Positions 3,989 to 16,930 of a stretch of DNA of 31,831 bases are shown piece after piece. Every line of letters starts with the position of its first letter. Within the stretch, counting starts at the first letter, position 1. A program made the translations under genes and the position numbers. The notes beneath the pieces are model-generated. The model saw only the letters and a program-made list of their open reading frames with translations. It did no database searches and was not told where the DNA came from. The DNA comes from Vitrella brassicaformis CCMP3155 (lineage: Eukaryota; Protista; Chromerida): positions 1 to 31,831 of the forward strand of contig CDMY01000676.1 of assembly GCA_001179505.1 (NCBI GenBank), given 5' to 3'.

Positions 3989-5283
3989 TCACTCACCTCG
4001 TGTGTGTTGCTCGCGGCCGCCCCGGCTTTTCGCCGCACATAGATGCTCCACACAAAAGAATAGAACCGCCACAAGCGCGACAAAGGCAGACACGATAAAG
4101 AGTGGGAGATTGATATCCTTCCTTGCCCACATAATCGTCAGCACCAAGATGGGCACTTCCAGCAGGGCAAAAGTAGTAGTCCACAGGTGTTGGCTGAATG
4201 AGGGAGAGCCGCGGATGGCATAGTGAATAGACAACGACACAAAGTCAGCCATCGACAAGCCCACGATGATGACGCCGGCAGCTCGGATGCCTTGACCTTC
4301 TCTTTCCAAGCCATGCGCTTCTCGATGACTTGGAAAGTCAGACCAGAAGAGTAATTCCACGCCCACCGCCACATCAGTAAGGAAGTCGATGGCCATCCCG
4401 ACAACGGCCAGCATCTTGTACAATCGGATGAACGTGAGATAATCCACCCGCTTGAGCCACCGCTTGGTCACGGATCGGTACAGGAAGGGCTCTGTTTGCC
4501 GAGCCTTGGCTATGCGCTCGGCCTTCGCCGATGGTCTCCAGCCTGCCCGACGGCCGCAGCATGATAGCCGGTCCTGATCGACGTCGAGGTCCCTTCCACC
4601 CGTCGGACTGGTCGATGCACGGACGACGCGCGGTTCCGATAAGACAACGAAGAGGGTGAACTGCACAAGAACCGCGCCAACCACCCACGCAAGTATGCCG
4701 AGACGCGAGAATTCTTGAAGTGACACGGCGCTCTCAGCGGCGGACATAGAAAAGAAGTACCCGGATCCCACGATGGTCAGAACGATAGAGAAGCAGATGA
4801 TGCATCGAATGCAACACGAGAGAGGCGGTGCGCACAGACTTCCCAATGCACAATGAGGACCATCACCAACAACAGTAGCAAAGTCGTGATCCCCAGCGGT
4901 AGCGCATCCTGTCGATATCCCCCGCCCGGGCTAGATAAATATGCACCATGTGGGAAGAAGAAATAGATAATGCCACCACACCAGCAGAGTGTATAGAGCA
5001 GGACCAGGCCGATGATGAGAAGGAAATGCCTCAGAGGGTAGTCCGTCAGCCAAAAGGTCACACAGCCAATCTGCAGCACCAGAAAGCCCCACAGATCAGC
5101 CCGGCCCTCCGCTGCAGGGGTGGAGACCGATGTCGAGACGGTGGTGGGAATATCTGAGAGCCGAGCGCTGCCTTTGCCCTCGCCCCCTGTAGCCTCCTCT
5201 GGCGAAACATCCACTTCAGAAGCCGATTCTTTGAGGACGTCTGGGAGATCTGCCGTGGCAGTGACCAACGTGGGCTGCTTCAT
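3989..5283 (-). pseudogene. Intronless multi-pass membrane protein of unknown family (about 430 aa if one frameshift near 4849 is corrected)
   Basis: Two overlapping ORFs (4777-5334, first ATG at 5283; and 3989-4846), each with several long hydrophobic helices. Adding one G to GTGCATTGG gives GTG GCA TTG GGA (..VLIVALGSLCAP..) and joins them. No microsatellite introns in 1.3 kb. Confidence 0.55.
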
Positions 5284-5381
5284 GGCTTTCAACCTTAAGT
5301 CTTGCGTGAGTATCTGCCCCTTTTGAGCTCGCAAGTGAAGGGATCGGTGGCCGAGGCAGGTTTGGGTGGTGATCTCCGCAG
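5284..5381. promoter_or_regulatory. Very short divergent intergenic spacer (putative bidirectional promoter/UTR overlap) between the TM gene and AP3M
   Basis: Candidate ATGs at 5283 (-) and 5382 (+) are only 98 bp apart, head to head. Confidence 0.3.
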
Positions 5382-5992
5382 ATGGATGCGCTCTTCATAC
5401 TCAACGACGCTGGGTGAGTGAGTGACAGGATAGATCTCACTCATTGCACACACACACGCCGTCTGCCTTGTGTATCCGTGCAGGAGTTTCATCGTCGAGA
5501 AGCACTTCCGAGGCCGCATTGGCCGCGCCGTCTGTGATCCTTTCCTGGACCTGTTGCAGACCCATGCCGAGAGGGGCTGGCGGGCGGGGGACGCCATTCC
5601 CGCGGTGTTCAGCCACGACAGGCGCCACACGCTCTTCCACATCCGCAAACACCGACTCTTCTACCTCGGCGTCACCAGAGTCGATGTACGCTTGCGATCA
5701 CTGACAGACAGGCTGACAGTCAGGCAGACAGGCAGAGATCGGTGGGGGTGGCAATGTGTGTGTGTGTGCAGGTATCTCCCTTGACGATGCTGGAGCTGTT
5801 GGAGCGCATCCACAGTGTGCTGGTGACCTACTTTGGCGAGGTGACGGAGGACACGCTGCGGTCCCACTTCTCCACCCTCTACCTGGTCCTCGACGAAATG
5901 GTCGACAGCGGCCTCCCCGCCATCACTGAACCAAACCTGCTAGAGGTCAGTGGCCACCATTCCACTCTATCGAAGCATCTCCCTCCCTCCCT

Positions 5993-8671: not shown

Positions 8672-10440
8672 TCACTTGTGGCCCGATCCAAACAGCCACA
8701 TGCCCAGCCCCCCCTCCAACTGGCTGGGGCCGCGTTTCACCCCCTGGCCGCCGGTGGTGGTGGTGGTCGTCGTCGTCGTCGAGGAAGCGGCAGCAGCAGC
8801 GGCAGGTCCCTCCTGGGGGGCCCCCGCGGCAGCAGCAGCAGTGGTAGTCGACGCCAGACGGGTGCCCTTGGTGGCGGCGGTGGAGTTGGTGGTGTTGGGT
8901 GTTGTGGTGATTTCGGCGGGCGTCTTGGGCGTGGCGATGGGCAGTGCCGGAGTTGGCATGACGGGGGGTGTCTTCAGGATGGCCGCGATGCACTTCGAAA
9001 CCTCGTCACTGAGCTTCTTCAGATCTGAAGGCGAAGGGGAAAGCGTGAAGGCGTGATGTGATCAGATTTTCTTTGTGCCGTCTCGTCTGCGCTGCGAGTC
9101 ACTCACTCTCGATGTCAGCCTTGTTGACGTACTGCTTCTCATCGTCTTCCTCCTTGATGACCTCCTTCACGACTTCTTTGACGATGGGCTCGCTCTCGAC
9201 GGCGTCCGTCTGCGTGTCCTTGGACTCGGCGACCGGCTTCTCCTTCTCTTGCTTGACGTTGTCGATTCGGTCGAGGGAGGGCTCGACAGGGCGCATCACG
9301 GGCGTGGTCTTGTTGGAGCGGGGCGTGGTCAAACCCGACGACAGAGAGTTGTTGTACCTATCAGTCCATCCATCCATCCATCACAGAAACAAAGCCACAT
9401 GCAGATCCAAGGCGTGTGTGTGACGGCAGGGGGGAGGGGGAGGATTCTGCCTTACGTGTCAGTGCTGCGCTCGTACTGGGGGTTCATCATCTCCATGAGT
9501 CCCTGTTGGTAGTCCACTTCTCGAATGAGCGCCTCATTCATCGCCTTCTCCGTCTCGAACGCAAACACGAGCTTGGGCACATCTGGCGAGACCAAGAGAA
9601 ACGAGTGGCACTGGCCCTCCTTGCCTGCCTGGTGAAACAAGTGGCCTACTGGGTGCGCTGGTGAAGGCCAGGCAGTATGATTGACCTGTTGAGGGAGGGG
9701 GAGGGCGGGGGGGGGGGGGGGGNNNNNNNNNNNNNNNNNNNNNNNNNNNNNNNNNNNNNNNNNNNNNNNNNNNNNNNNNNNNNNNNNNNNNNNNNNNNNN
9801 NNNNNNNNNNNNNNNNNNNNNNNNNNNNNNNNNNNNNNNNNNNNNNNNNNNNNNNNNNNNNNNNNNNNNNNNNNNNNNNNNNNNNNNNNNNNNNNNNNNN
9901 NNNNNNNNNNNNNNNNNNNNNNNNNNNNNNNNNNNNNNNNNNNNNNNNNNNNNNNNNNNNNNNNNNNNNNNNNNNNNNNNNNNNNNNNNNNNNNNNNNNN
10001 NNNNNNNNNNNNNNNNNNNNNNGGGGGGGAAGACAACGAACCAAAGCAGTGGTTGTGTGTTTGTGTGTGGGAGGGGAGGGGAGGGGGTCTGCCAGTGGCC
10101 AGTCTATCTATCTATCTAGCCCTTCCCTCCCACCTTTGAACGAGTGAAGGACCTCGACCTTGGAACTGTACGCGCGCTGCCTCATGGCATTGGGGCGCCC
10201 CTGGGCAGTCGCCGCCTGCATGTCTGGGTACGTCAGCCATCCGCCATGGAAAAGCTGCACACACTCCCTGGCCCATCTCCCCCCTTCGAAAGTACCTGAA
10301 CACCAACCCCCCCTCACACAGACAGGCTCACACAGGCGGGGGGTTGGCTGTCCGTTCATGCCCTCTCGTGTGTTACCGTCATACGAGCTGTCATAGACCA
10401 GCACGTTTCTCTTCCGCCACGCCTGGCTGTGGAATCCCAT
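8672..10440 (-). CDS. Hypothetical protein with an N-terminal PH-like domain and an acidic, Thr/Ala-rich low-complexity C-terminus; interrupted by an assembly gap
   Basis: Phase-compatible exons MGFHSQAWRKRNVLVYDSSYD / GTFEGGRWARECVQLFHGGWLTY.. /gap/ ..QCHSFLLVSPDVPKLVFAFETEKAMNEALIREV / YNNSLSS..ADIE / LKKLSDEVSKCIAAILKTPP..GHK*. W-x-R-x-x-V-x-L and F-x-F-E-(T)-E-K-x-M resemble PH beta-2 and the C-terminal helix. Start and stop positions are tentative. Confidence 0.6.
9723..10022. other. Assembly gap (300 N) flanked by poly-G runs
   Basis: Seen directly. Confidence 0.99.
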
Positions 10441-10883
10441 GGTGGTCAGGTGGTTGTGGTTGTCCTTGGTCAAACACAGACCGTTCGTTGAGAAACCTTG
10501 TTTGTTTGTTTGCTTTCAAAGAAACAGGTGGGCAAATGTTGAAGAAACCGTCCGACGGATATCTGGGCAACAGAGCGAAGAGCGAAGATCTCACCTTCGC
10601 TATTAAGCTCGCAGAGCTGACAGAGCGGCTTCACGGAATGTCCTAAGCCTGACGATTTCTTCGGGTTACGATTGCACCATGGCAGCTTTCGTACGGTTTC
10701 TGGCGCTCATGAAGGTCCGTCGAGCGCTCATCTAGGTGGGAAATGGGCGCAGTGACGGTCAAGAGTGCAAGCAGACAGCATGGAGCCCTCCGCTGTGTTC
10801 CTTTTCCTCATTTCGTCCGCAGACAGAAGAAGCCGCCTTTGAGCAGTGGAGGCGGGCGACTCGGAGGAGAACTCCGAGGCAAG

Positions 10884-12380
10884 ATGGGCCGCGCAGATGA
10901 CCATCCGGACATCAACAACCAGCAGGGCTTCTACATGCCACCGCCCAGGTGAATGAGTGCAGTGCCGACACACACCTGACAGATCCATCCATCCATCCAT
11001 CCATCCGTCAGGTTCCCTCAGGCGTTCGGCCCCTTCCCTCCCCGCCCCAGGCCTTCCCGGCCTTCCCCTCCGTCAGCCCCGCCGTGCAGACGCTCCTCGA
11101 CCAGCTCCCCGTCGACGACCGACCCGACTACCTGCCCATCAGTCCCATCCTGCAGGACATCCCCCGACAGCCCCTCGTCACCATCCACGGCGACAACCAC
11201 AGCGGCTTCCAGCTGGGTCACACCTACGAGCGGCCGTGTCTGATGCAGTGGCTCAACAGCAAGGGCTTCTCGCCCATGAGCAAGCGGACGCTGACGGGGA
11301 GCCGTGTGGCGAGCAACCATGAGGTCTTGTCGCGGATTGAGGATTGGGGGCGGGAGCAGAGCAGCTGCGTCTTCGGCATGGGTGTGTGGGTGTGGGTGAA
11401 GATGGAGAGGCAGCGGGAAAGGGAGGGGGCAATGAGGGTGAGAGGGATAGCTCTGCTGCTGCGGCGGCGGCGGCGGCGGCAGGTGGTGGTGGTGGTGGTG
11501 TTGCAGCCGGCCACGGCAACAAGATTGAGATAGGTACCGTCACAAAGGGTCGGGGCTGAGGTGTCTGTGATGCATTGTGTTGTGTTGTTTGTGGGGCGGG
11601 GTCAGATTTGACTCTGTCGCCGGCGCCGAACGTCCTTCGGCCTGGTCCAGCAGCAGCTGCTGCTGCGGCTGCTGCAGCCTACAACACACCGGTACCCACA
11701 ACACATTGATATGTTGTCCTGTGGGTGGGTGTCCATTCCATTCACTGGTCCTGCCTCGGTGTGTGTGTTGCGTCTGTTGCGTCTGTCTGGCAGGTTGACG
11801 ACTCGTCTGACGACCTGTTGGCGTCGCTGCCGCAGGAGGAGGAGCTCAATGGCGAGGCCATGAATCCTCCCCCACACCATCAAGCTGCTGCTGCTGGGGT
11901 ATATCTAGATTACGTCGATTTCCATCCATTGAGTCATGATCATGTTTGCGCATCCATCGATGGCTCATGCCTGCCTGCTGTTGGACTGTCAGCGCCTGTT
12001 GGATGAGCGCCCGCTGGGTCCGGCGTGGCTTCGCCAGCTCTTCAGGCACTTCCGCCCCTTCGGGTTCAGGGGGCGACCACCGCTCTTCGTACGCAATGCA
12101 CCCACGCCAAACTCGAACGCACTGGACGCCCTCTTGTGCAACGCTGTTCTCTCTTTGGTGTGGTGTGGCATGTGTGCGTGTGTGTGAACAGCGCCCTCGT
12201 CCCGCCATCCCCCCCTGGGCGCAGCGCAGGCAGCAGACGTATGGTGAGGCCGCTGGGGCTGCCGGCGGTGATGGTGGGGGTGGTGTTGGTGTTGGTGTGG
12301 GTGCGGGCAATGGGCAGCGCAATGTGCGGCCGCGATTCATGATTGAAATTGAAGTGGAAGGGGGGCACTGTAGCGAATGG
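10884..12380 (+). CDS. U-box (RING-like E3 ubiquitin ligase domain) protein with Pro/Ala/Gly-rich linkers; two apparent single-base frameshifts (about 11045 and 11356); 3' end undefined
   Basis: U-box motif PDYLPISPILQDIPRQPLV..GHTYERPCLMQWLNSKGFSPMSKRTL..VASNHEVLSRIEDW at about 11120-11350. Exon 1 is MGRADDHPDINNQQGFYMPPP. Downstream exons DLTLSPAPNV.., VDDSSDDLL.., RLLDERPLGPAW.., RPRPAIPPW.. join with matching phases. Confidence 0.7.
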
Positions 12381-12605
12381 GTGAGTGCTTGCGTGAGTGG
12401 ATGGTTGTGTATAGCTGCCATGGTGTATATAGCTGGATGGATGGGTGGCGTCACCGGCGTGTTGTTAATCCATACCTTGCTACGTACCCACACGCCAACC
12501 ATCCGTGATTTCCCCGAACGCCCAACCACTCAGCCGACAAAAGGGCAAAAGTCAATCCCACACACCGAGGAAAGAGATGGAGAAACGGACCACACGACGC
12601 CGGGA

Positions 12606-12639
12606 GGCGAGAATTCGAATTCTCGCCGTCTCGAGACGG
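12606..12639. promoter_or_regulatory. Two overlapping perfect palindromes (22 bp GGCGAGAATTCGAATTCTCGCC; 14 bp CCGTCTCGAGACGG)
   Basis: The palindromes at 12606-12627 and 12626-12639 are seen directly. A regulatory role is only inferred from their position upstream of the Josephin-like A exons. Confidence 0.35.
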
Positions 12640-12770
12640 TTTTCAATTTTTCCGCGCCAGCTCTCCTCATTTCTCACTGTCCGCCTCGTAATTCCTTCGT
12701 TTCTTCTCATTTTTCGGCGGGAGTGGTCGGGCGCCATCGGCCCGCAGCCCCCCCGGCCCGCCGCCGGCGG

Positions 12771-13955
12771 GAGGGCGACCACATCGTCCTCACCGTCGGC
12801 GAGAGGGAGGTGCGCTACTTCTTCCAGGAGCAGCGCAAGAAGGGCGGCTTCTACGACTTCTCGTGCGGCTTCAAGGCCATGAACATGGCCATGGGGAGCC
12901 TCACGCTGCCCAATCACCTGTTCCGCAAGAAGGACCTCCAGCTGCCGTTTGAAGAGCACCTGCAAGGACCGGTAGGTAGGCAGTGAGAGAGACCACACAC
13001 TCACACACACATCCATCCATCCATCCATCTCTTGTGCTGTCTGTCTGTCAGATATCCGCTGCCGAGGCCGGAGACTACCTGAACAAGTACACAGAGCTGA
13101 CGGCCGTGGTCCTCTCCGACGTAAGTGCGACGCACACACACCACAACAAACACAGCCCATCCGTCCGCTCATTGTCTTTGGATCGATGGACGCACCAGGT
13201 GTATGGTAAGGACCTGTCGCAGAGGATTGCCCACCTGGGCGGCACGAGCTCGAGTGACGTCACAGGCGTCATCATGACCACAGAGGCGAGGCCCTTTCCC
13301 GGCGATAACCAGACGGTGGACCCATATGCAGTACATCCGGCTGCTGGGCGAGGGCCTGTGGCTCGACCAGGACTCGATTACGGAGCTGCCCGACGGCGGG
13401 AGGGGCGACAGGGTGCTGCTGACCAACGAGCGGCTGACCAACCTCATCGCCAGGGACCAACACTTCGGGTTCCTCAAGACGGGCTTCGAGGACATCGACA
13501 TGTATCAGCAGTACTCGGCCATCGCACTCGTCAGCTCGCCGGTCGCCCGACACCGAGCCATGAACCCCCCTTCCCCTCCCCCACAGGCACCCCCCCAGGC
13601 ACCCCCACAGGCACCCCCTGCCCATCCCCTTCCCCCTGCAGACGGCGACCAGGCCATGGCGGGCGGGGCGGCTGCTGCCGCCGACGAGGCCTTACAGCCG
13701 CCCTTCTTGCGCTGTAAGGGCAGCTATATTACGAGCTCTCGTGCGGGTTCAATACGAGGGACACCAGGAGACACCAGGAGACGCCAGCAACGGTGTAGTG
13801 CCATCAGTTGCCCTCTTCAAGCCGCCGCCTCAGCCGAAGGCCCCGCAAAACGGTCAGAGGCGCACGCAGGCGCCCAATGGAGTAATGGCGGGGGCCGGAG
13901 GACCTGCAGCCCCACCAGATTCAGCCATTATTGCCCAACACATCACACGGGATAA
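12771..13955 (+). pseudogene. Josephin-like (papain-fold) cysteine peptidase / putative deubiquitinase A; +1 frameshift near 13295, no clear own ATG, tail truncated relative to paralog B
   Basis: YFFQEQRKKGGFYDFSCGFKAMNMAMG (Cys 12864-12866) and WTHMQYIRLLGEGLWLDQDS (His 13323-13325, Asp 13371-13373) mirror the Josephin motifs F-HE-x-Q..C-x-x-H-x-x-N and H-W-x-x-I-R..W-x-N-L-D-S. Introns 12972-13051 and 13121-13198 are phase 0. Confidence 0.6.
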
Positions 13956-14119
13956 TAACCTGCTACACGTGAGAGAGATTATGCACAGAGACTCCCATGT
14001 GTACCAAAGCACATGACGGGATCCATCACGTCGCGCGTATCTCTGTCCGTCTCTCTGTGCAGCAGAGGCTTGGGAATCGCGAGGTCAGAGCTGACCTGAC
14101 GGCCCAGAGTGTGGGAGTC

Positions 14120-15990
14120 CACCGCCGCCAGAGTACATACGAACCACAAGGAGGACGCAAGCCTGGACAATTTTCCACTCCAAATACGGTGTGTTTGCAT
14201 GTCAGACGAAGTGTTGAGAGATCCGACCGGAATTGCGGTTCAGGGAGAATAGGGGTCGGAGCATGCCCATCACGGTAAGACCAGAAGCACTCACTGTCTG
14301 ATAGACGCCAAGTAGCCGGAGTGGTTGGTGCAGCGAGTGAGCGAAGCCATCACACACACACACACACACGCATCCCTCCCTCCCTCCCTCCCTCCCTCCT
14401 GCTTTTGTCTCTGTCTGCGCCTCGGTCAGGCTGAGGGCCTTTTGCAGAGGACACTCTCAAAAATCGCTACCTACATTTTATATCTGGACGAGCCTCTCCC
14501 AGCAAATGCATCATGTCCCACTCACTTCTCGAGACACTGCGCCAGACACCAGGCAACAATCATGGTAATTGGAGAACACACAGAGCTGACAAATACTTAC
14601 TTAGTCAATTGTGTGTTTGCATGACAGACCGAGTTGGGGGAGATCCAACCAGGGCTTCGCTTCAAAGAGAATGGGGGCCGCAGCATGCCCATCAGTATAA
14701 TTAAGACCAGAAAGACTGTTTGTGTGTGTGTGTGTGTGTGTGAGCAGTACTCTGGTGAGGTTGAAAGGCTGCGTAGTGAGCTGAGCAAGTCGGCCGAGGA
14801 GTACACCAGCGAGTTGACCAAGGTGAGTTGGAATGGTGCAGGGAGGGAGTCAGTGAAGGAATTGGTGGGTGGATGGGACGGTGGGTGCACTGATTGCTCT
14901 GGAGAGAGAGGATGGATGGATGGATTGTGTGTGTCTGTGTGTGTGTGTTGGTTCAGGTCAAGTCCAGTTTGGAGGCCGTGCAGAGTGACAAGGACCGTCA
15001 GCTGGACCAACGCCAAGCCAACGTCGACCAGATGAGTGAGTGGATCATGAGACGAGCGAGGCGGGCACACCCACAAACTAACAGACATCCATACATCCAC
15101 ACACAAATCCCTCCCTCTCTCCGGGAGACTCTCCCTAGCCAACACACACACACACGTACGCAACACACCACAGCAACTCTGTCTGTGTGTGTGTGTGTGT
15201 GTCTATGTGTGCTTTAGAGGCGCCGCCCACAGATTCGCCCTGCTTTCGAGCCCTACAGCCCGCCGCGCCACACAGAAGTGTCGATGCCCCCCCAAACACA
15301 CGCCGTCGCCCCTCCACCTACCCCTTTCCAGGTACAGCAATCCAGGTATGCATTGGACAAACACACAGCTGACGAATAAAAATATTTGTTGTGCATTTGC
15401 ATGTCAGACTGAGTTGGGGACCATCCACCCTGAGCTGCGCTTTAGGGAGAATGGGGGCTGCAGCATGCCCATCCGGGTAGTTAAGACCAGAAAGACTGTG
15501 TGATAATAGACCTCCGCTCATGCGTTGTGGCTTTTATCAATCAGGGTGCATGACTGACGTGCTGACTGACTGACGGGATGGGACGATGCTGACTGACGGT
15601 GGGTGCGTGTGTGCAGCTGTGATGACTGACGTGGTTTGCTTTTCGGACATACATGCAGGAAGGGTGCGTGCATGAGGCACATACTTCCTTGTGTTGTGCG
15701 CTTTGTCCTGGTCCTGGGCGAGAGAGGGAGGGAGAGGACTGACCGATCCGATTCATACACCACACCCTGATGACCGATTGGTGTGCGCCAGACACACAAT
15801 GCGTGGGCTTCGCTTTCATCTGTAGAATGGCTGCCTACTTTTTATATCTGAATGAGCCGTGTCTCTCTGTTGCGCGTGTCTGTCTTGATGCTGACGGTGT
15901 GTGTATGTGTGTATGCCGTGTGCAGCTGTGATGACTGACTGACGTGCTTGGCTTCTCGGACATACATGTCGGTAGGATGCAGAAGGTCCG
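14120..15990 (+). pseudogene. Patchwork of decayed, internally duplicated exons of an unidentified gene (includes coiled-coil exons at 14746-15060)
   Basis: Three copies of a 69-nt exon with flanking intron (14206-14274, 14628-14696, 15408-15476). Two copies of ATYILYLDEP / AAYFLYLNEP (about 14465 and 15830). Two copies of gtgcagctgtgatgactgac..cggacatacatg (about 15612 and 15920). Coiled-coil exons YSGEVERLRSELSKSAEEYTSELTK / VKSSLEAVQSDKDRQLDQRQ. Confidence 0.5.
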
Positions 15991-16276
15991 ATTATTCTAG
16001 TTACTAGTCAGGTGTCTGAACACTGCAACCACTGCGAGCGGTAATGCCGCCCGACCATCCCCGACTTACCGAACCCTCCTCCCTCAGCCACATCCCCCAG
16101 CCAGCCCAACGATAAGAGAGAGAAAAGGCAATTACCTTTGCACATACACACACATACACACACATATTCACAACGAGTGATAAACCCGCCAACCCGTCTG
16201 TCCGTCATGATCAACCTGTCCCTCCCCCATCCATCCATCCATCCATCCGTGAACCCATCCCTCACTGTCGGTTGAA

Positions 16277-16930
16277 TCATGCCATCATGCACAGCGGAAA
16301 CCTAGCCGCCCCACACACGGCCCCGAACGGCGGGCAGCATGAAGCCTTCCCCGGCCTGGCCCGCCGACACCGCCGCCCACACCCCCGATGCCCACACTGC
16401 GCCGGGCAGCACGCAGCTGTGCCCGACTTCTCATCCTCAGCGAATATGCCGCCCAGGTACCTCACGCACACCTCTTCTGCCTCATGTGGGGTCGGCAGTG
16501 CCTGTGTCTGGTTGCTGGCTGTTGATGTTGACGTTGATGTGATGGCGCTGTCTGGTAGTGCTGGCAGCTGCTGCGGCTCTTTGGGCTGTTTGCTTGGTGG
16601 TGGTGGGCGTGAGGCGGTCCAGTAGAGGGCCCACGACCGAGATAAACCGGTGTCTAGCTGCCGGGGACGGTAGACCTGAGATAAACCGGTGTCTAGGTAC
16701 TCGTAGTGTGAGGCCCTCACGAAGGTGGTCGTGTTCATGGTTGTGTGGTTGCCCGTGTCCAGGTGCGGGCAGGGACGAGGCGGACATGATGGATGACGGT
16801 GTCCCCGCAGCAGCAGCAGCAGCAGCAGCAGCTGCAGCAGTACCAGCTGATCACGCTGATGTCCGCATGGATGACGATGAATTGCGGGAAGAATTGATGG
16901 ATGACTGATGAGTGAGGCCGGATGGATCAA
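16277..16930. other. GC-rich coding-like segment, strand unresolved (217-aa minus ORF with Cys-rich end, or a plus-strand terminal exon GAGRDEADMMDDGVP(A)nVPADHADVRMDDDELREELMDD*)
   Basis: Both readings are visible. There is a (GCA)n tract at about 16806-16840 and a 19-bp direct repeat gagataaaccggtgtctag at about 16649 and 16678. Confidence 0.3.

What the first reader, a model, noticed from the sequence alone, without database searches (positions are those of the whole stretch)
10884..13955. Possible U-box E3 + Josephin DUB fusion (ubiquitin-editing architecture)
Seen: U-box gene exons join in phase up to 12191-12380, and that frame stays open without a stop from 12191 to 12971, straight into the Josephin-like A catalytic-Cys exon. 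A phase-0 donor (12381) and a phase-0 candidate acceptor (ccactcag, about 12533) would also keep the frame. Gene A has no own ATG and the U-box gene has no own stop. Established: proteins combining ligase and DUB activity (A20: OTU + ZnF) edit ubiquitin chains; I do not recall a U-box + Josephin combination. Inference: either a real or ancestral fusion, or two decayed neighbours. The pyrimidine-rich, palindrome-bearing spacer at 12500-12720 looks promoter-like, which argues for caution.
Basis: partly seen in the sequence, partly recalled or inferred. Interest (0 to 1): 0.75.

Follow-up and report, generated by a model that had tools for sequence, protein, structure and literature searches.

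The report
Accidental open frame, not a fusion
The reading frame joining a ubiquitin-ligase gene to a protease-like gene in this alga is real, but it crosses non-coding DNA at a rearranged junction and ends in a truncated, frame-broken gene fragment, so it is very unlikely to be a working two-enzyme protein.

Summary
One frame is stop-free from 11940 to 12983. U-box exons 2-7 join in phase, and a U-box domain is confirmed by Pfam.

The fusion reading does not hold. The genome is Vitrella brassicaformis-like.
- Window 10808-12677 is an 82.5% duplicate of contig C887:160029-161993. That copy has a complete ATG-to-TGA U-box gene with nothing Josephin-like after it.
- The window has two extra bases at 12336-12337. 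They push the paralog's stop (12344-12346) out of frame.
- The "spacer" is the U-box gene's 3' flank (12381-12605) plus the first ~157 bp of a dispersed repeat (12606-12762). It shows no codon periodicity (GC3 0.56, against 0.8-0.93 in exons).
- "Gene A" homology starts exactly where the repeat stops. It is an internal fragment (12761 to about 13690) of a Vitrella-only family with at least 8 loci. It lacks the family's 5' exons and its 3' end.
- Its frame breaks just before the catalytic His codon (13323-13325).
- No other family locus examined has this U-box gene's exons nearby.

Stop-free stretches this long are common here: 7.5-10% of all such windows.

The Josephin assignment is only a lead. 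Pfam and a PDB profile search were blank, and AlphaFold models were poor.

Transcript data could not be reached.

The parts
10884..10948 (+). U-box gene exon 1 (ATG 10884, donor GT at 10949)
   Evidence: Conserved with the C887 paralog's exon 1, with an in-frame 3-nt difference.
11012..11381 (+). U-box gene exon 2. The U-box domain lies at about 11126-11362. There is a 1-nt deletion at 11055 relative to the paralog. An alternative in-phase acceptor gives an exon start at 11077.
   Evidence: Pfam PF04564 E=1.8e-5, above the cut-off. The domain is 98.2% identical to the paralog, against about 90% in introns.
11507..12088 (+). U-box gene exons 3-6 (11507-11533, 11606-11691, 11794-11898, 11993-12088) with their introns
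   Evidence: GT/AG borders, all in phase, and the same structure in the paralog.
12192..12380 (+). U-box gene exon 7. Two extra bases at 12336-12337 put the paralog's stop codon position (TGA 12344-12346) out of frame.
   Evidence: Pairwise alignment with L026. The C887 model ends ...RPRHD-TGA.
12381..12605 (+). 3' flank of the U-box gene, shared with the paralog and non-coding
   Evidence: Indels of 4, 4, 16, 1 and 21 nt against the paralog. GC1/2/3 = 0.53/0.55/0.56.
12606..12762 (+). First ~157 bp of a dispersed repeat. Perfect palindromes lie at 12606-12627 and 12626-12639.
   Evidence: 12 genome hits to the palindrome motif against 0 for the reversed control. At least 15 loci match 12678-12762. 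Full copies run on for 500 bp or more.
12761..12971 (+). Gene A remnant of the Cys exon (Cys codon 12864-12866, donor 12972). The conserved 5' part of this exon is missing.
   Evidence: 90% DNA identity to C887:104311-104142, starting abruptly at 12761. Paralogs carry about 20 further conserved residues plus upstream exons.
13052..13120 (+). Gene A middle exon
   Evidence: Aligns with family members. GT/AG borders, phase 0. GC3 0.83.
13199..13690 (+). Gene A exon with the His block. The frame breaks between 13278 and 13322. The His codon 13323-13325 lies in a different frame from the exon's first part. Family homology ends at about 13690.
   Evidence: Alignment A3. Paralogs C405, C501 and C581 are continuous here. 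A-B DNA homology ends at 13689. The C-terminal family blocks are absent from 10-19 kb.
13800..14104 (+). Resumption of collinearity with the C887 U-box locus, downstream of the gene A fragment
   Evidence: 88.8% identity to C887:162723-163035.

Best explanation
The long open frame is an accident at a rearranged junction, not a ligase-protease fusion gene.

Shown:
- A duplicated copy of a seven-exon U-box gene has two extra bases just before the position where its paralog carries the stop codon. Its frame therefore runs on.
- It runs through the gene's own non-coding 3' flank and then through the first ~157 bp of a dispersed repeat.
- It then enters an internal fragment of a lineage-specific, Josephin-like cysteine-protease family gene. 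That fragment begins exactly where the repeat is cut off.
- The fragment lacks the family's own 5' exons with their start codon and lacks its 3' end. It carries a frame break just before the catalytic His.

Inferred:
- The fragment is a pseudogene.
- The window's U-box copy is either decaying or makes a protein with a meaningless tail.
- No ubiquitin-editing E3-DUB enzyme is made here.
For: 1. Paralog comparison. Window 10808-12677 matches C887:160029-161993 at 82.5%, and homology resumes at 13800. The C887 copy has a complete in-phase model from ATG to TGA, 299 or 350 aa. It has 729 bp of unrelated sequence where gene A sits.
2. The stop loss is explained by a 2-nt indel at 12336-12337.
3. 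The spacer is non-coding. Its indels against the paralog are not multiples of three. It has no codon periodicity: GC3 is 0.56, against 0.79-0.93 in the conserved exons.
4. 12606-12762 is a repeat fragment. At C887 160 kb and 222 kb this repeat precedes another gene.
5. Gene A homology starts at 12761. Family members P0001, P0002 and P0004 have their own MEGG/MEF-type first exons. Nothing like these is found in the window. The C-terminal blocks are also absent.
6. There is a frame break before the His codon, while three paralogs are continuous there.
7. None of the seven other family loci fetched has this U-box gene's exons within about 4-6 kb, and the only other copy of this U-box gene in the genome lies 56 kb from the family locus on C887.
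8. Searches of 5.8 and 1.84 billion proteins found no protein containing exon 7 or the junction. They returned only four Vitrella paralog models.
9. Stop-free runs of this length are common in this genome.
Against: - Gene A's exons keep a strong coding signature (GC3 0.8-0.93) and intact in-phase splice sites, so any decay is recent.
- The U-box domain is much better conserved between the two copies than the introns are (98.2% against about 90%). The window's U-box copy may therefore still be in use.
- That copy has no in-frame stop before 12984, so if it is expressed it must read into the gene A fragment.
- A phase-0 donor (12381) and a phase-0 cag acceptor (exon start 12534) exist.
- The dinucleotide-shuffle probability of an open spacer is only 3%.
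- No transcript data could be consulted. Records of this genome are withheld from the contig look-up.
- The three small indels could be assembly errors.
Confidence: 0.8

Rival explanations
1. This is a young chimeric gene. Stop loss and rearrangement created a transcribed U-box protein. Its new C-terminal extension is the repeat-derived linker plus the Cys half of a Josephin-like domain. It arises either by read-through of 12381-12761 or by splicing from 12381 to 12534. Without the His block the protease part would be inactive, perhaps serving as a ubiquitin-binding module.
For: The frame is open from 12192 to 12983. A phase-0 donor and acceptor exist. The U-box domain is under constraint in both copies. 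The window's copy has no earlier stop. Gene A's splice sites are intact and in phase (and direct reading).
Against: The spacer has no coding signature. The best-looking cag acceptors (exon starts 12661 and 12748) are out of phase. Exon 1 is out of phase with the normal acceptor. No protein with this junction exists in the libraries searched. The architecture is unique to this locus.
Confidence: 0.08
2. These are two separate live genes. The U-box gene ends near 12400, and gene A is transcribed on its own from a promoter in the palindrome-bearing repeat.
For: At two other loci the same repeat lies upstream of a different gene. Gene A's exons look coding.
Against: The gene A homology region has no ATG before the catalytic Cys. 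The family's own first exons are missing. There is a frame break before the His codon. The 3' end is missing. The U-box frame has no stop before 12984.
Confidence: 0.05
3. Assembly errors create the apparent lesions at 11055, 12336-12337 and 13278-13322. In reality the U-box gene has its stop, as in the paralog, and gene A has an intact catalytic core. The open frame would then not exist.
For: Two of the three indels sit in or next to short homopolymer runs (and direct reading). The contig is a short scaffold (31.8 kb) with N gaps. The coding signature on both sides of the gene A break is strong.
Against: No read data were available. Other family copies (C206, C460) also carry frame breaks, so decay is common in this family. 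Even without the small indels, gene A would still lack its 5' exons and 3' end.
Confidence: 0.07

Closest known systems
U-box E3 ubiquitin ligases (Pfam PF04564; CHIP and E4B type domain)
   Same: Exon 2 matches the U-box profile above Pfam's cut-off. The domain is strongly conserved between the two Vitrella copies.
   Different: Only profile positions 23-72 match. The rest of the protein is low-complexity with no recognised domain. No relatives were found outside this genome in the searches run.
Josephin / MJD deubiquitinases (Pfam PF02099; ataxin-3, JOSD1/2)
   Same: The family has a Cys followed by a small-residue/Asn motif: SCGFKAMNMAMG here and SCPYKALNNLLG in the C501 paralog. It also has a His block of the type H-x4-[RK]-x-L-G-x-G-[LV]-W-x-D-x-[DE]-[ST]. 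By my recollection these resemble the Josephin Cys and His motifs. The three best named clusters in the ESM Atlas feature search are Josephin, at 0.89.
   Different: The Josephin HMM matches no exon or paralog, and it finds only the canonical gene on C366. A profile search of PDB is blank. The fold could not be tested (pLDDT 41-44). In this copy the His block is out of frame.
Ubiquitin-editing enzymes and E3-DUB pairs (A20; CHIP with ataxin-3)
   Same: A U-box ligase and a Josephin DUB do work as a pair in animals. Ataxin-3 edits the chains made by CHIP (review PMC4017836). A fusion would therefore have been a plausible Rosetta-stone case.
   Different: Here there is no evidence of one polypeptide, no intact protease core, and no conservation of the arrangement.
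Chimeric or decaying loci made by segmental duplication and repeat-mediated rearrangement
   Same: The segment is duplicated (82.5% identity). A gene fragment abuts a truncated dispersed repeat with a few bases of microhomology. Small frame-shifting indels are present.
   Different: Whether the junction is transcribed is unknown.

Membership tests
U-box domain (PF04564) | Profile HMM match above the curated cut-off | tested here: met
   25.3 bits against 21.4, E=1.8e-5, on window:11012-11392.
Josephin (PF02099) | Profile HMM match above the curated cut-off | tested here: not met
   No match on any gene A exon, on P0001 or P0004, or on the C501, C581 or gene B translations, even at E<=10. A six-frame genome search with the HMM finds only C366:253690-254412 and a weak C911 hit.
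Josephin (PF02099) | Catalytic Cys, His and Asn/Asp in one reading frame | tested here: not met
   The Cys codon is 12864-12866. The His codon 13323-13325 lies in another frame than the first part of its exon. Paralogs C405, C501 and C581 have both in frame.
Josephin (PF02099) | Papain-like Josephin fold | tested here: inconclusive
   Two AlphaFold2 runs on the family alignment gave mean pLDDT 41.5 and 43.6, so no fold search was made. The ESM Atlas feature search puts Josephin clusters first, at 0.89. That is a lead only.
E3-DUB fusion (ubiquitin-editing enzyme) | Both domains encoded in one transcript and polypeptide | not testable with these tools
   No transcript data were available. Records of this genome are left out of the contig look-up. 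No protein with the junction was found in 5.8 or 1.84 billion sequences.
E3-DUB fusion (ubiquitin-editing enzyme) | Architecture conserved in paralogs or orthologs | tested here: not met
   The paralogous U-box gene ends with TGA and has no gene A after it. None of the seven other family loci fetched has this U-box gene's exons within about 4-6 kb, and the genome holds only one other copy of this U-box gene, 56 kb from the family locus on C887.
E3-DUB fusion (ubiquitin-editing enzyme) | Linker between the domains is coding or a clean intron | tested here: not met
   The spacer has no codon periodicity. Its indels against the paralog are not multiples of three. It is half made of a dispersed repeat. 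Only one weak cag acceptor (exon start 12534) is in phase.

The most novel reading that the evidence does not exclude
A very young chimeric gene caught at birth. Loss of the stop codon in a duplicated U-box ligase gene, plus a repeat-mediated rearrangement, appended the Cys half of a Josephin-like domain to the ligase. This would give a transcribed U-box protein with a catalytically dead, possibly ubiquitin-binding, protease remnant.
Probability: 0.07. Interest if true: 0.5.

Novelty: not a real feature. Interest (0 to 1): 0.15.

Why it matters
A true U-box plus Josephin fusion would have been a Rosetta-stone link for the CHIP/ataxin-3 type ligase-deubiquitinase partnership (PMC4017836). It would also have been a new ubiquitin-editing architecture in an alveolate. 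The evidence shows the apparent fusion is a by-product of duplication, a 2-nt indel, a repeat fragment and a truncated gene copy. It should not be carried forward as a domain architecture. The locus does show two things of use. In this GC-rich genome, long open frames across gene junctions arise easily. And the lineage-specific Josephin-like family is turning over fast, with several broken copies.

Tried and rejected
1. Annotated gene models.
- A word search with the 348-aa open frame returned only the C887 paralog model P0001.
- The U-box exon returned nothing at 115-367 aa.
- A full HMMER scan of 1.84 billion representatives returned only four Vitrella paralog models.
- I found a neighbouring annotated protein (P0005) in order to read the annotated gene map. 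The contig look-up leaves this genome out.

2. Josephin membership.
- Pfam on exons and paralogs, PDB by sequence and by profile, and two AlphaFold2 runs were all blank or low-confidence.
- I did not run a fold search, because the models were too poor to give meaningful matches.

3. RNA families. Rfam on 10500-14500 gave no match, so the palindromes are not a known RNA.

4. Orthologs. A metagenome scan for the U-box gene found none.

5. Family N-terminal and C-terminal exons. I searched the window for them and found only proline-rich noise.

6. Joined spliced models. I neither searched nor folded any joined spliced model. Exons were handled one by one by reference, and phases were checked by arithmetic only.

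Full report
**Organism and setting.**
The window is a whole 31,831-bp contig (C676) of a 72.7-Mb, 1064-contig assembly. Its proteins are named Vitrella brassicaformis CCMP3155 by NCBI and UniProt. It is a GC-rich, intron-rich eukaryotic genome.

**The observation.**
- The frame with codon starts at 11940+3n is stop-free from 11940 to 12983. At 348 codons it is the longest such run in the window.
- The exon translated from 11012-11392 matches the U-box profile above Pfam's cut-off (E=1.8e-5).
- Exons 11077-11381, 11507-11533, 11606-11691, 11794-11898, 11993-12088 and 12192-12380 have GT/AG borders and join in phase.
- The donor at 12381 is phase 0. A cag acceptor giving an exon start at 12534 is also phase 0.
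- One correction: exon 1 (ATG 10884) does not join the ordinary acceptor (exon start 11012) in phase. It joins only an alternative one, at 11077.
- A second correction: in-frame ATGs do exist at 12420 and 12441, but they lie in U-box-gene flank.

**Is it more than chance?**
A dinucleotide shuffle of the 127-codon spacer is stop-free in 3% of trials. In the real window, 7.5-10% of all 113-127-codon windows over the six frames are stop-free. There are 100 stop-free runs of at least 127 codons. Open frames of this size are ordinary here.

**The paralog comparison is decisive.**
- Window 10808-12677 aligns at 82.5% with C887:160029-161993, and homology resumes at 13800-14104 and beyond.
- The C887 copy has a complete, in-phase gene from ATG to TGA. 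It is 299 aa with intron 2 spliced, or 350 aa without.
- Its last exon ends ...RPRHD-TGA. In the window two extra bases at 12336-12337 shift that TGA (12344-12346) out of frame. This is why 'the U-box gene has no own stop'.
- The window copy also has a 1-nt deletion at 11055, inside exon 2.
- Codon differences between the copies are 9 synonymous to 33 non-synonymous.
- The U-box domain itself is 98.2% identical, against about 90% in introns. The domain has therefore been constrained in both copies, while the tail evolves freely.

**The spacer.**
- 12381-12605 is the U-box gene's 3' flank. It is shared with the paralog but carries indels of 4, 4, 16, 1 and 21 nt.
- 12606-12762 is the first ~157 bp of a dispersed repeat.
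  - The palindrome motif occurs 12 times in the genome, against 0 for the reversed control.
  - At least 15 loci match 12678-12762.
  - Full copies continue for 500 bp or more past the point where the window's copy stops.
- The spacer has GC1/2/3 of about 0.55/0.57/0.56. The conserved exons on either side have GC3 of 0.79-0.93.
- No Rfam family matches.
- At C887 160 kb and 222 kb the same repeat subfamily is followed by another gene with repeated coiled-coil exons. In the window the gene A fragment takes the place of that gene's first 729 bp.

**Gene A.**
- It belongs to a family found only in Vitrella. The 1.84-billion-protein scan returned four hits, all Vitrella paralog models.
- The family has loci on C887 (104 kb), C624, C206, C405, C581, C501 and C460, plus gene B of this window.
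- Annotated members begin with their own MEGG/MEF first exon and a proline-rich exon. Their Cys exon starts about 20 conserved residues earlier than the window's homology.
- In the window, DNA homology to the nearest relative starts abruptly at 12761. That is exactly where the repeat ends.
- No N-terminal family exons are found anywhere in the window.
- Homology ends at about 13690. The family's C-terminal KRKR...EPLDQ block and last exon are absent.
- Inside the fragment, the first part of the third exon (...VIMTTEARPFPGDNQT) and the His block (THMQYIRLLGEGLWLDQDS) are in different frames. The break lies between 13278 and 13322.
- Paralogs on C405, C501 and C581 are continuous at this point.
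- Other copies are also broken. C206 has a frame break, C460 has a broken Cys exon, and C887:104 kb is an A/B hybrid that the annotation merged into P0001.

**Fusion test.**
- None of the seven other family loci fetched has this U-box gene's exons within about 4-6 kb.
- The only other copy of this U-box gene lies 56 kb away from the family locus on C887, on the other strand, and ends with its own stop.
- No protein containing exon 7 or the junction exists in the libraries searched.
- If the junction were read through or spliced, the product would carry the Cys block but not the His block of the protease-like domain.

**Josephin or not.**
- Pfam's Josephin model matches none of the family. In a six-frame search of the genome it finds only a canonical gene on C366.
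- PDB sequence and profile searches are blank.
- Two AlphaFold2 runs gave pLDDT 41-44.
- The motif resemblance is from my own recollection of ataxin-3 and the JOSD proteins. With the ESM Atlas feature search (three best named clusters are Josephin at 0.89), it makes 'Josephin-like' a reasonable lead. It is not an established membership.

**Verdict.**
The open frame is real, but the fusion is not a real feature. It is most likely an accidental continuity across a stop-loss indel, non-coding flank, a repeat fragment and a truncated, frame-broken gene copy (confidence 0.8). A young chimeric transcript cannot be excluded without RNA data (about 0.07-0.08).

**Limits.**
Joined spliced models were not searched or folded. 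Exons were treated one by one by reference. Transcript evidence and read-level checks of the indels were out of reach.

Noticed in passing
window 12606-12762; also L033-L046 (e.g. C284:15247, C334:31472, C62:1670, C178:623): A dispersed repeat of 700 bp or more begins with two overlapping perfect palindromes (22 nt around GAATTCGAATTC, and 14 nt around CTCGAG). At least 15 copies exist. Its nature (transposon end, promoter module) is unknown, and no obvious transposase ORF lies downstream in two copies.
   Followed up: partly
L010 = C887:98000-107999 (A/B hybrid at C887:102844-104311, minus strand): The annotated protein P0001 (386 aa) merges an A-type Cys exon with a B-type gene and so carries two Cys motifs 79 bp apart. 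It looks like an unequal-recombination product of a tandem A-B pair. The locus also holds an N gap.
   Followed up: partly
window 14716-16556; C887:163727-166999 and about 224 kb: A downstream gene is built from repeated short exons encoding a coiled-coil-like unit (QYSGEVERLRSELSKSAEEY... type), present in several tandem copies at three loci. In the window its 5' part is replaced by the gene A fragment.
   Followed up: no
L012 (C206:6500-16499) about 5355-5402; L016 (C460) about 6300-6120: Further broken copies of the Josephin-like family. C206 has a frame break between ...LCVN and ESIV..., and C460 has a Cys exon disrupted right after CPYK. The family seems to decay fast.
   Followed up: partly
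L015 (C501:1264-2424): This is the most Josephin-like member by eye (SCPYKALNNLLG; THIQAIRLLGNGVWADMET). It reads as one 387-codon open frame, because a 78-nt intron happens to be in frame and stop-free.
   Followed up: partly
C366:253690-254412 (L047-L050): A canonical Josephin gene of Vitrella in four exons. It is the only locus that the Pfam Josephin model finds above its cut-off.
   Followed up: no
window 3992-4846 (minus strand): A multi-pass membrane protein (annotated as P0005, 256 aa). It has several Vitrella paralogs and 58-62% identical proteins on JGI metagenome contigs. No Pfam domain is on record.
   Followed up: no
window about 9700-10030: An N gap in the scaffold lies just upstream of the U-box gene.
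   Followed up: no
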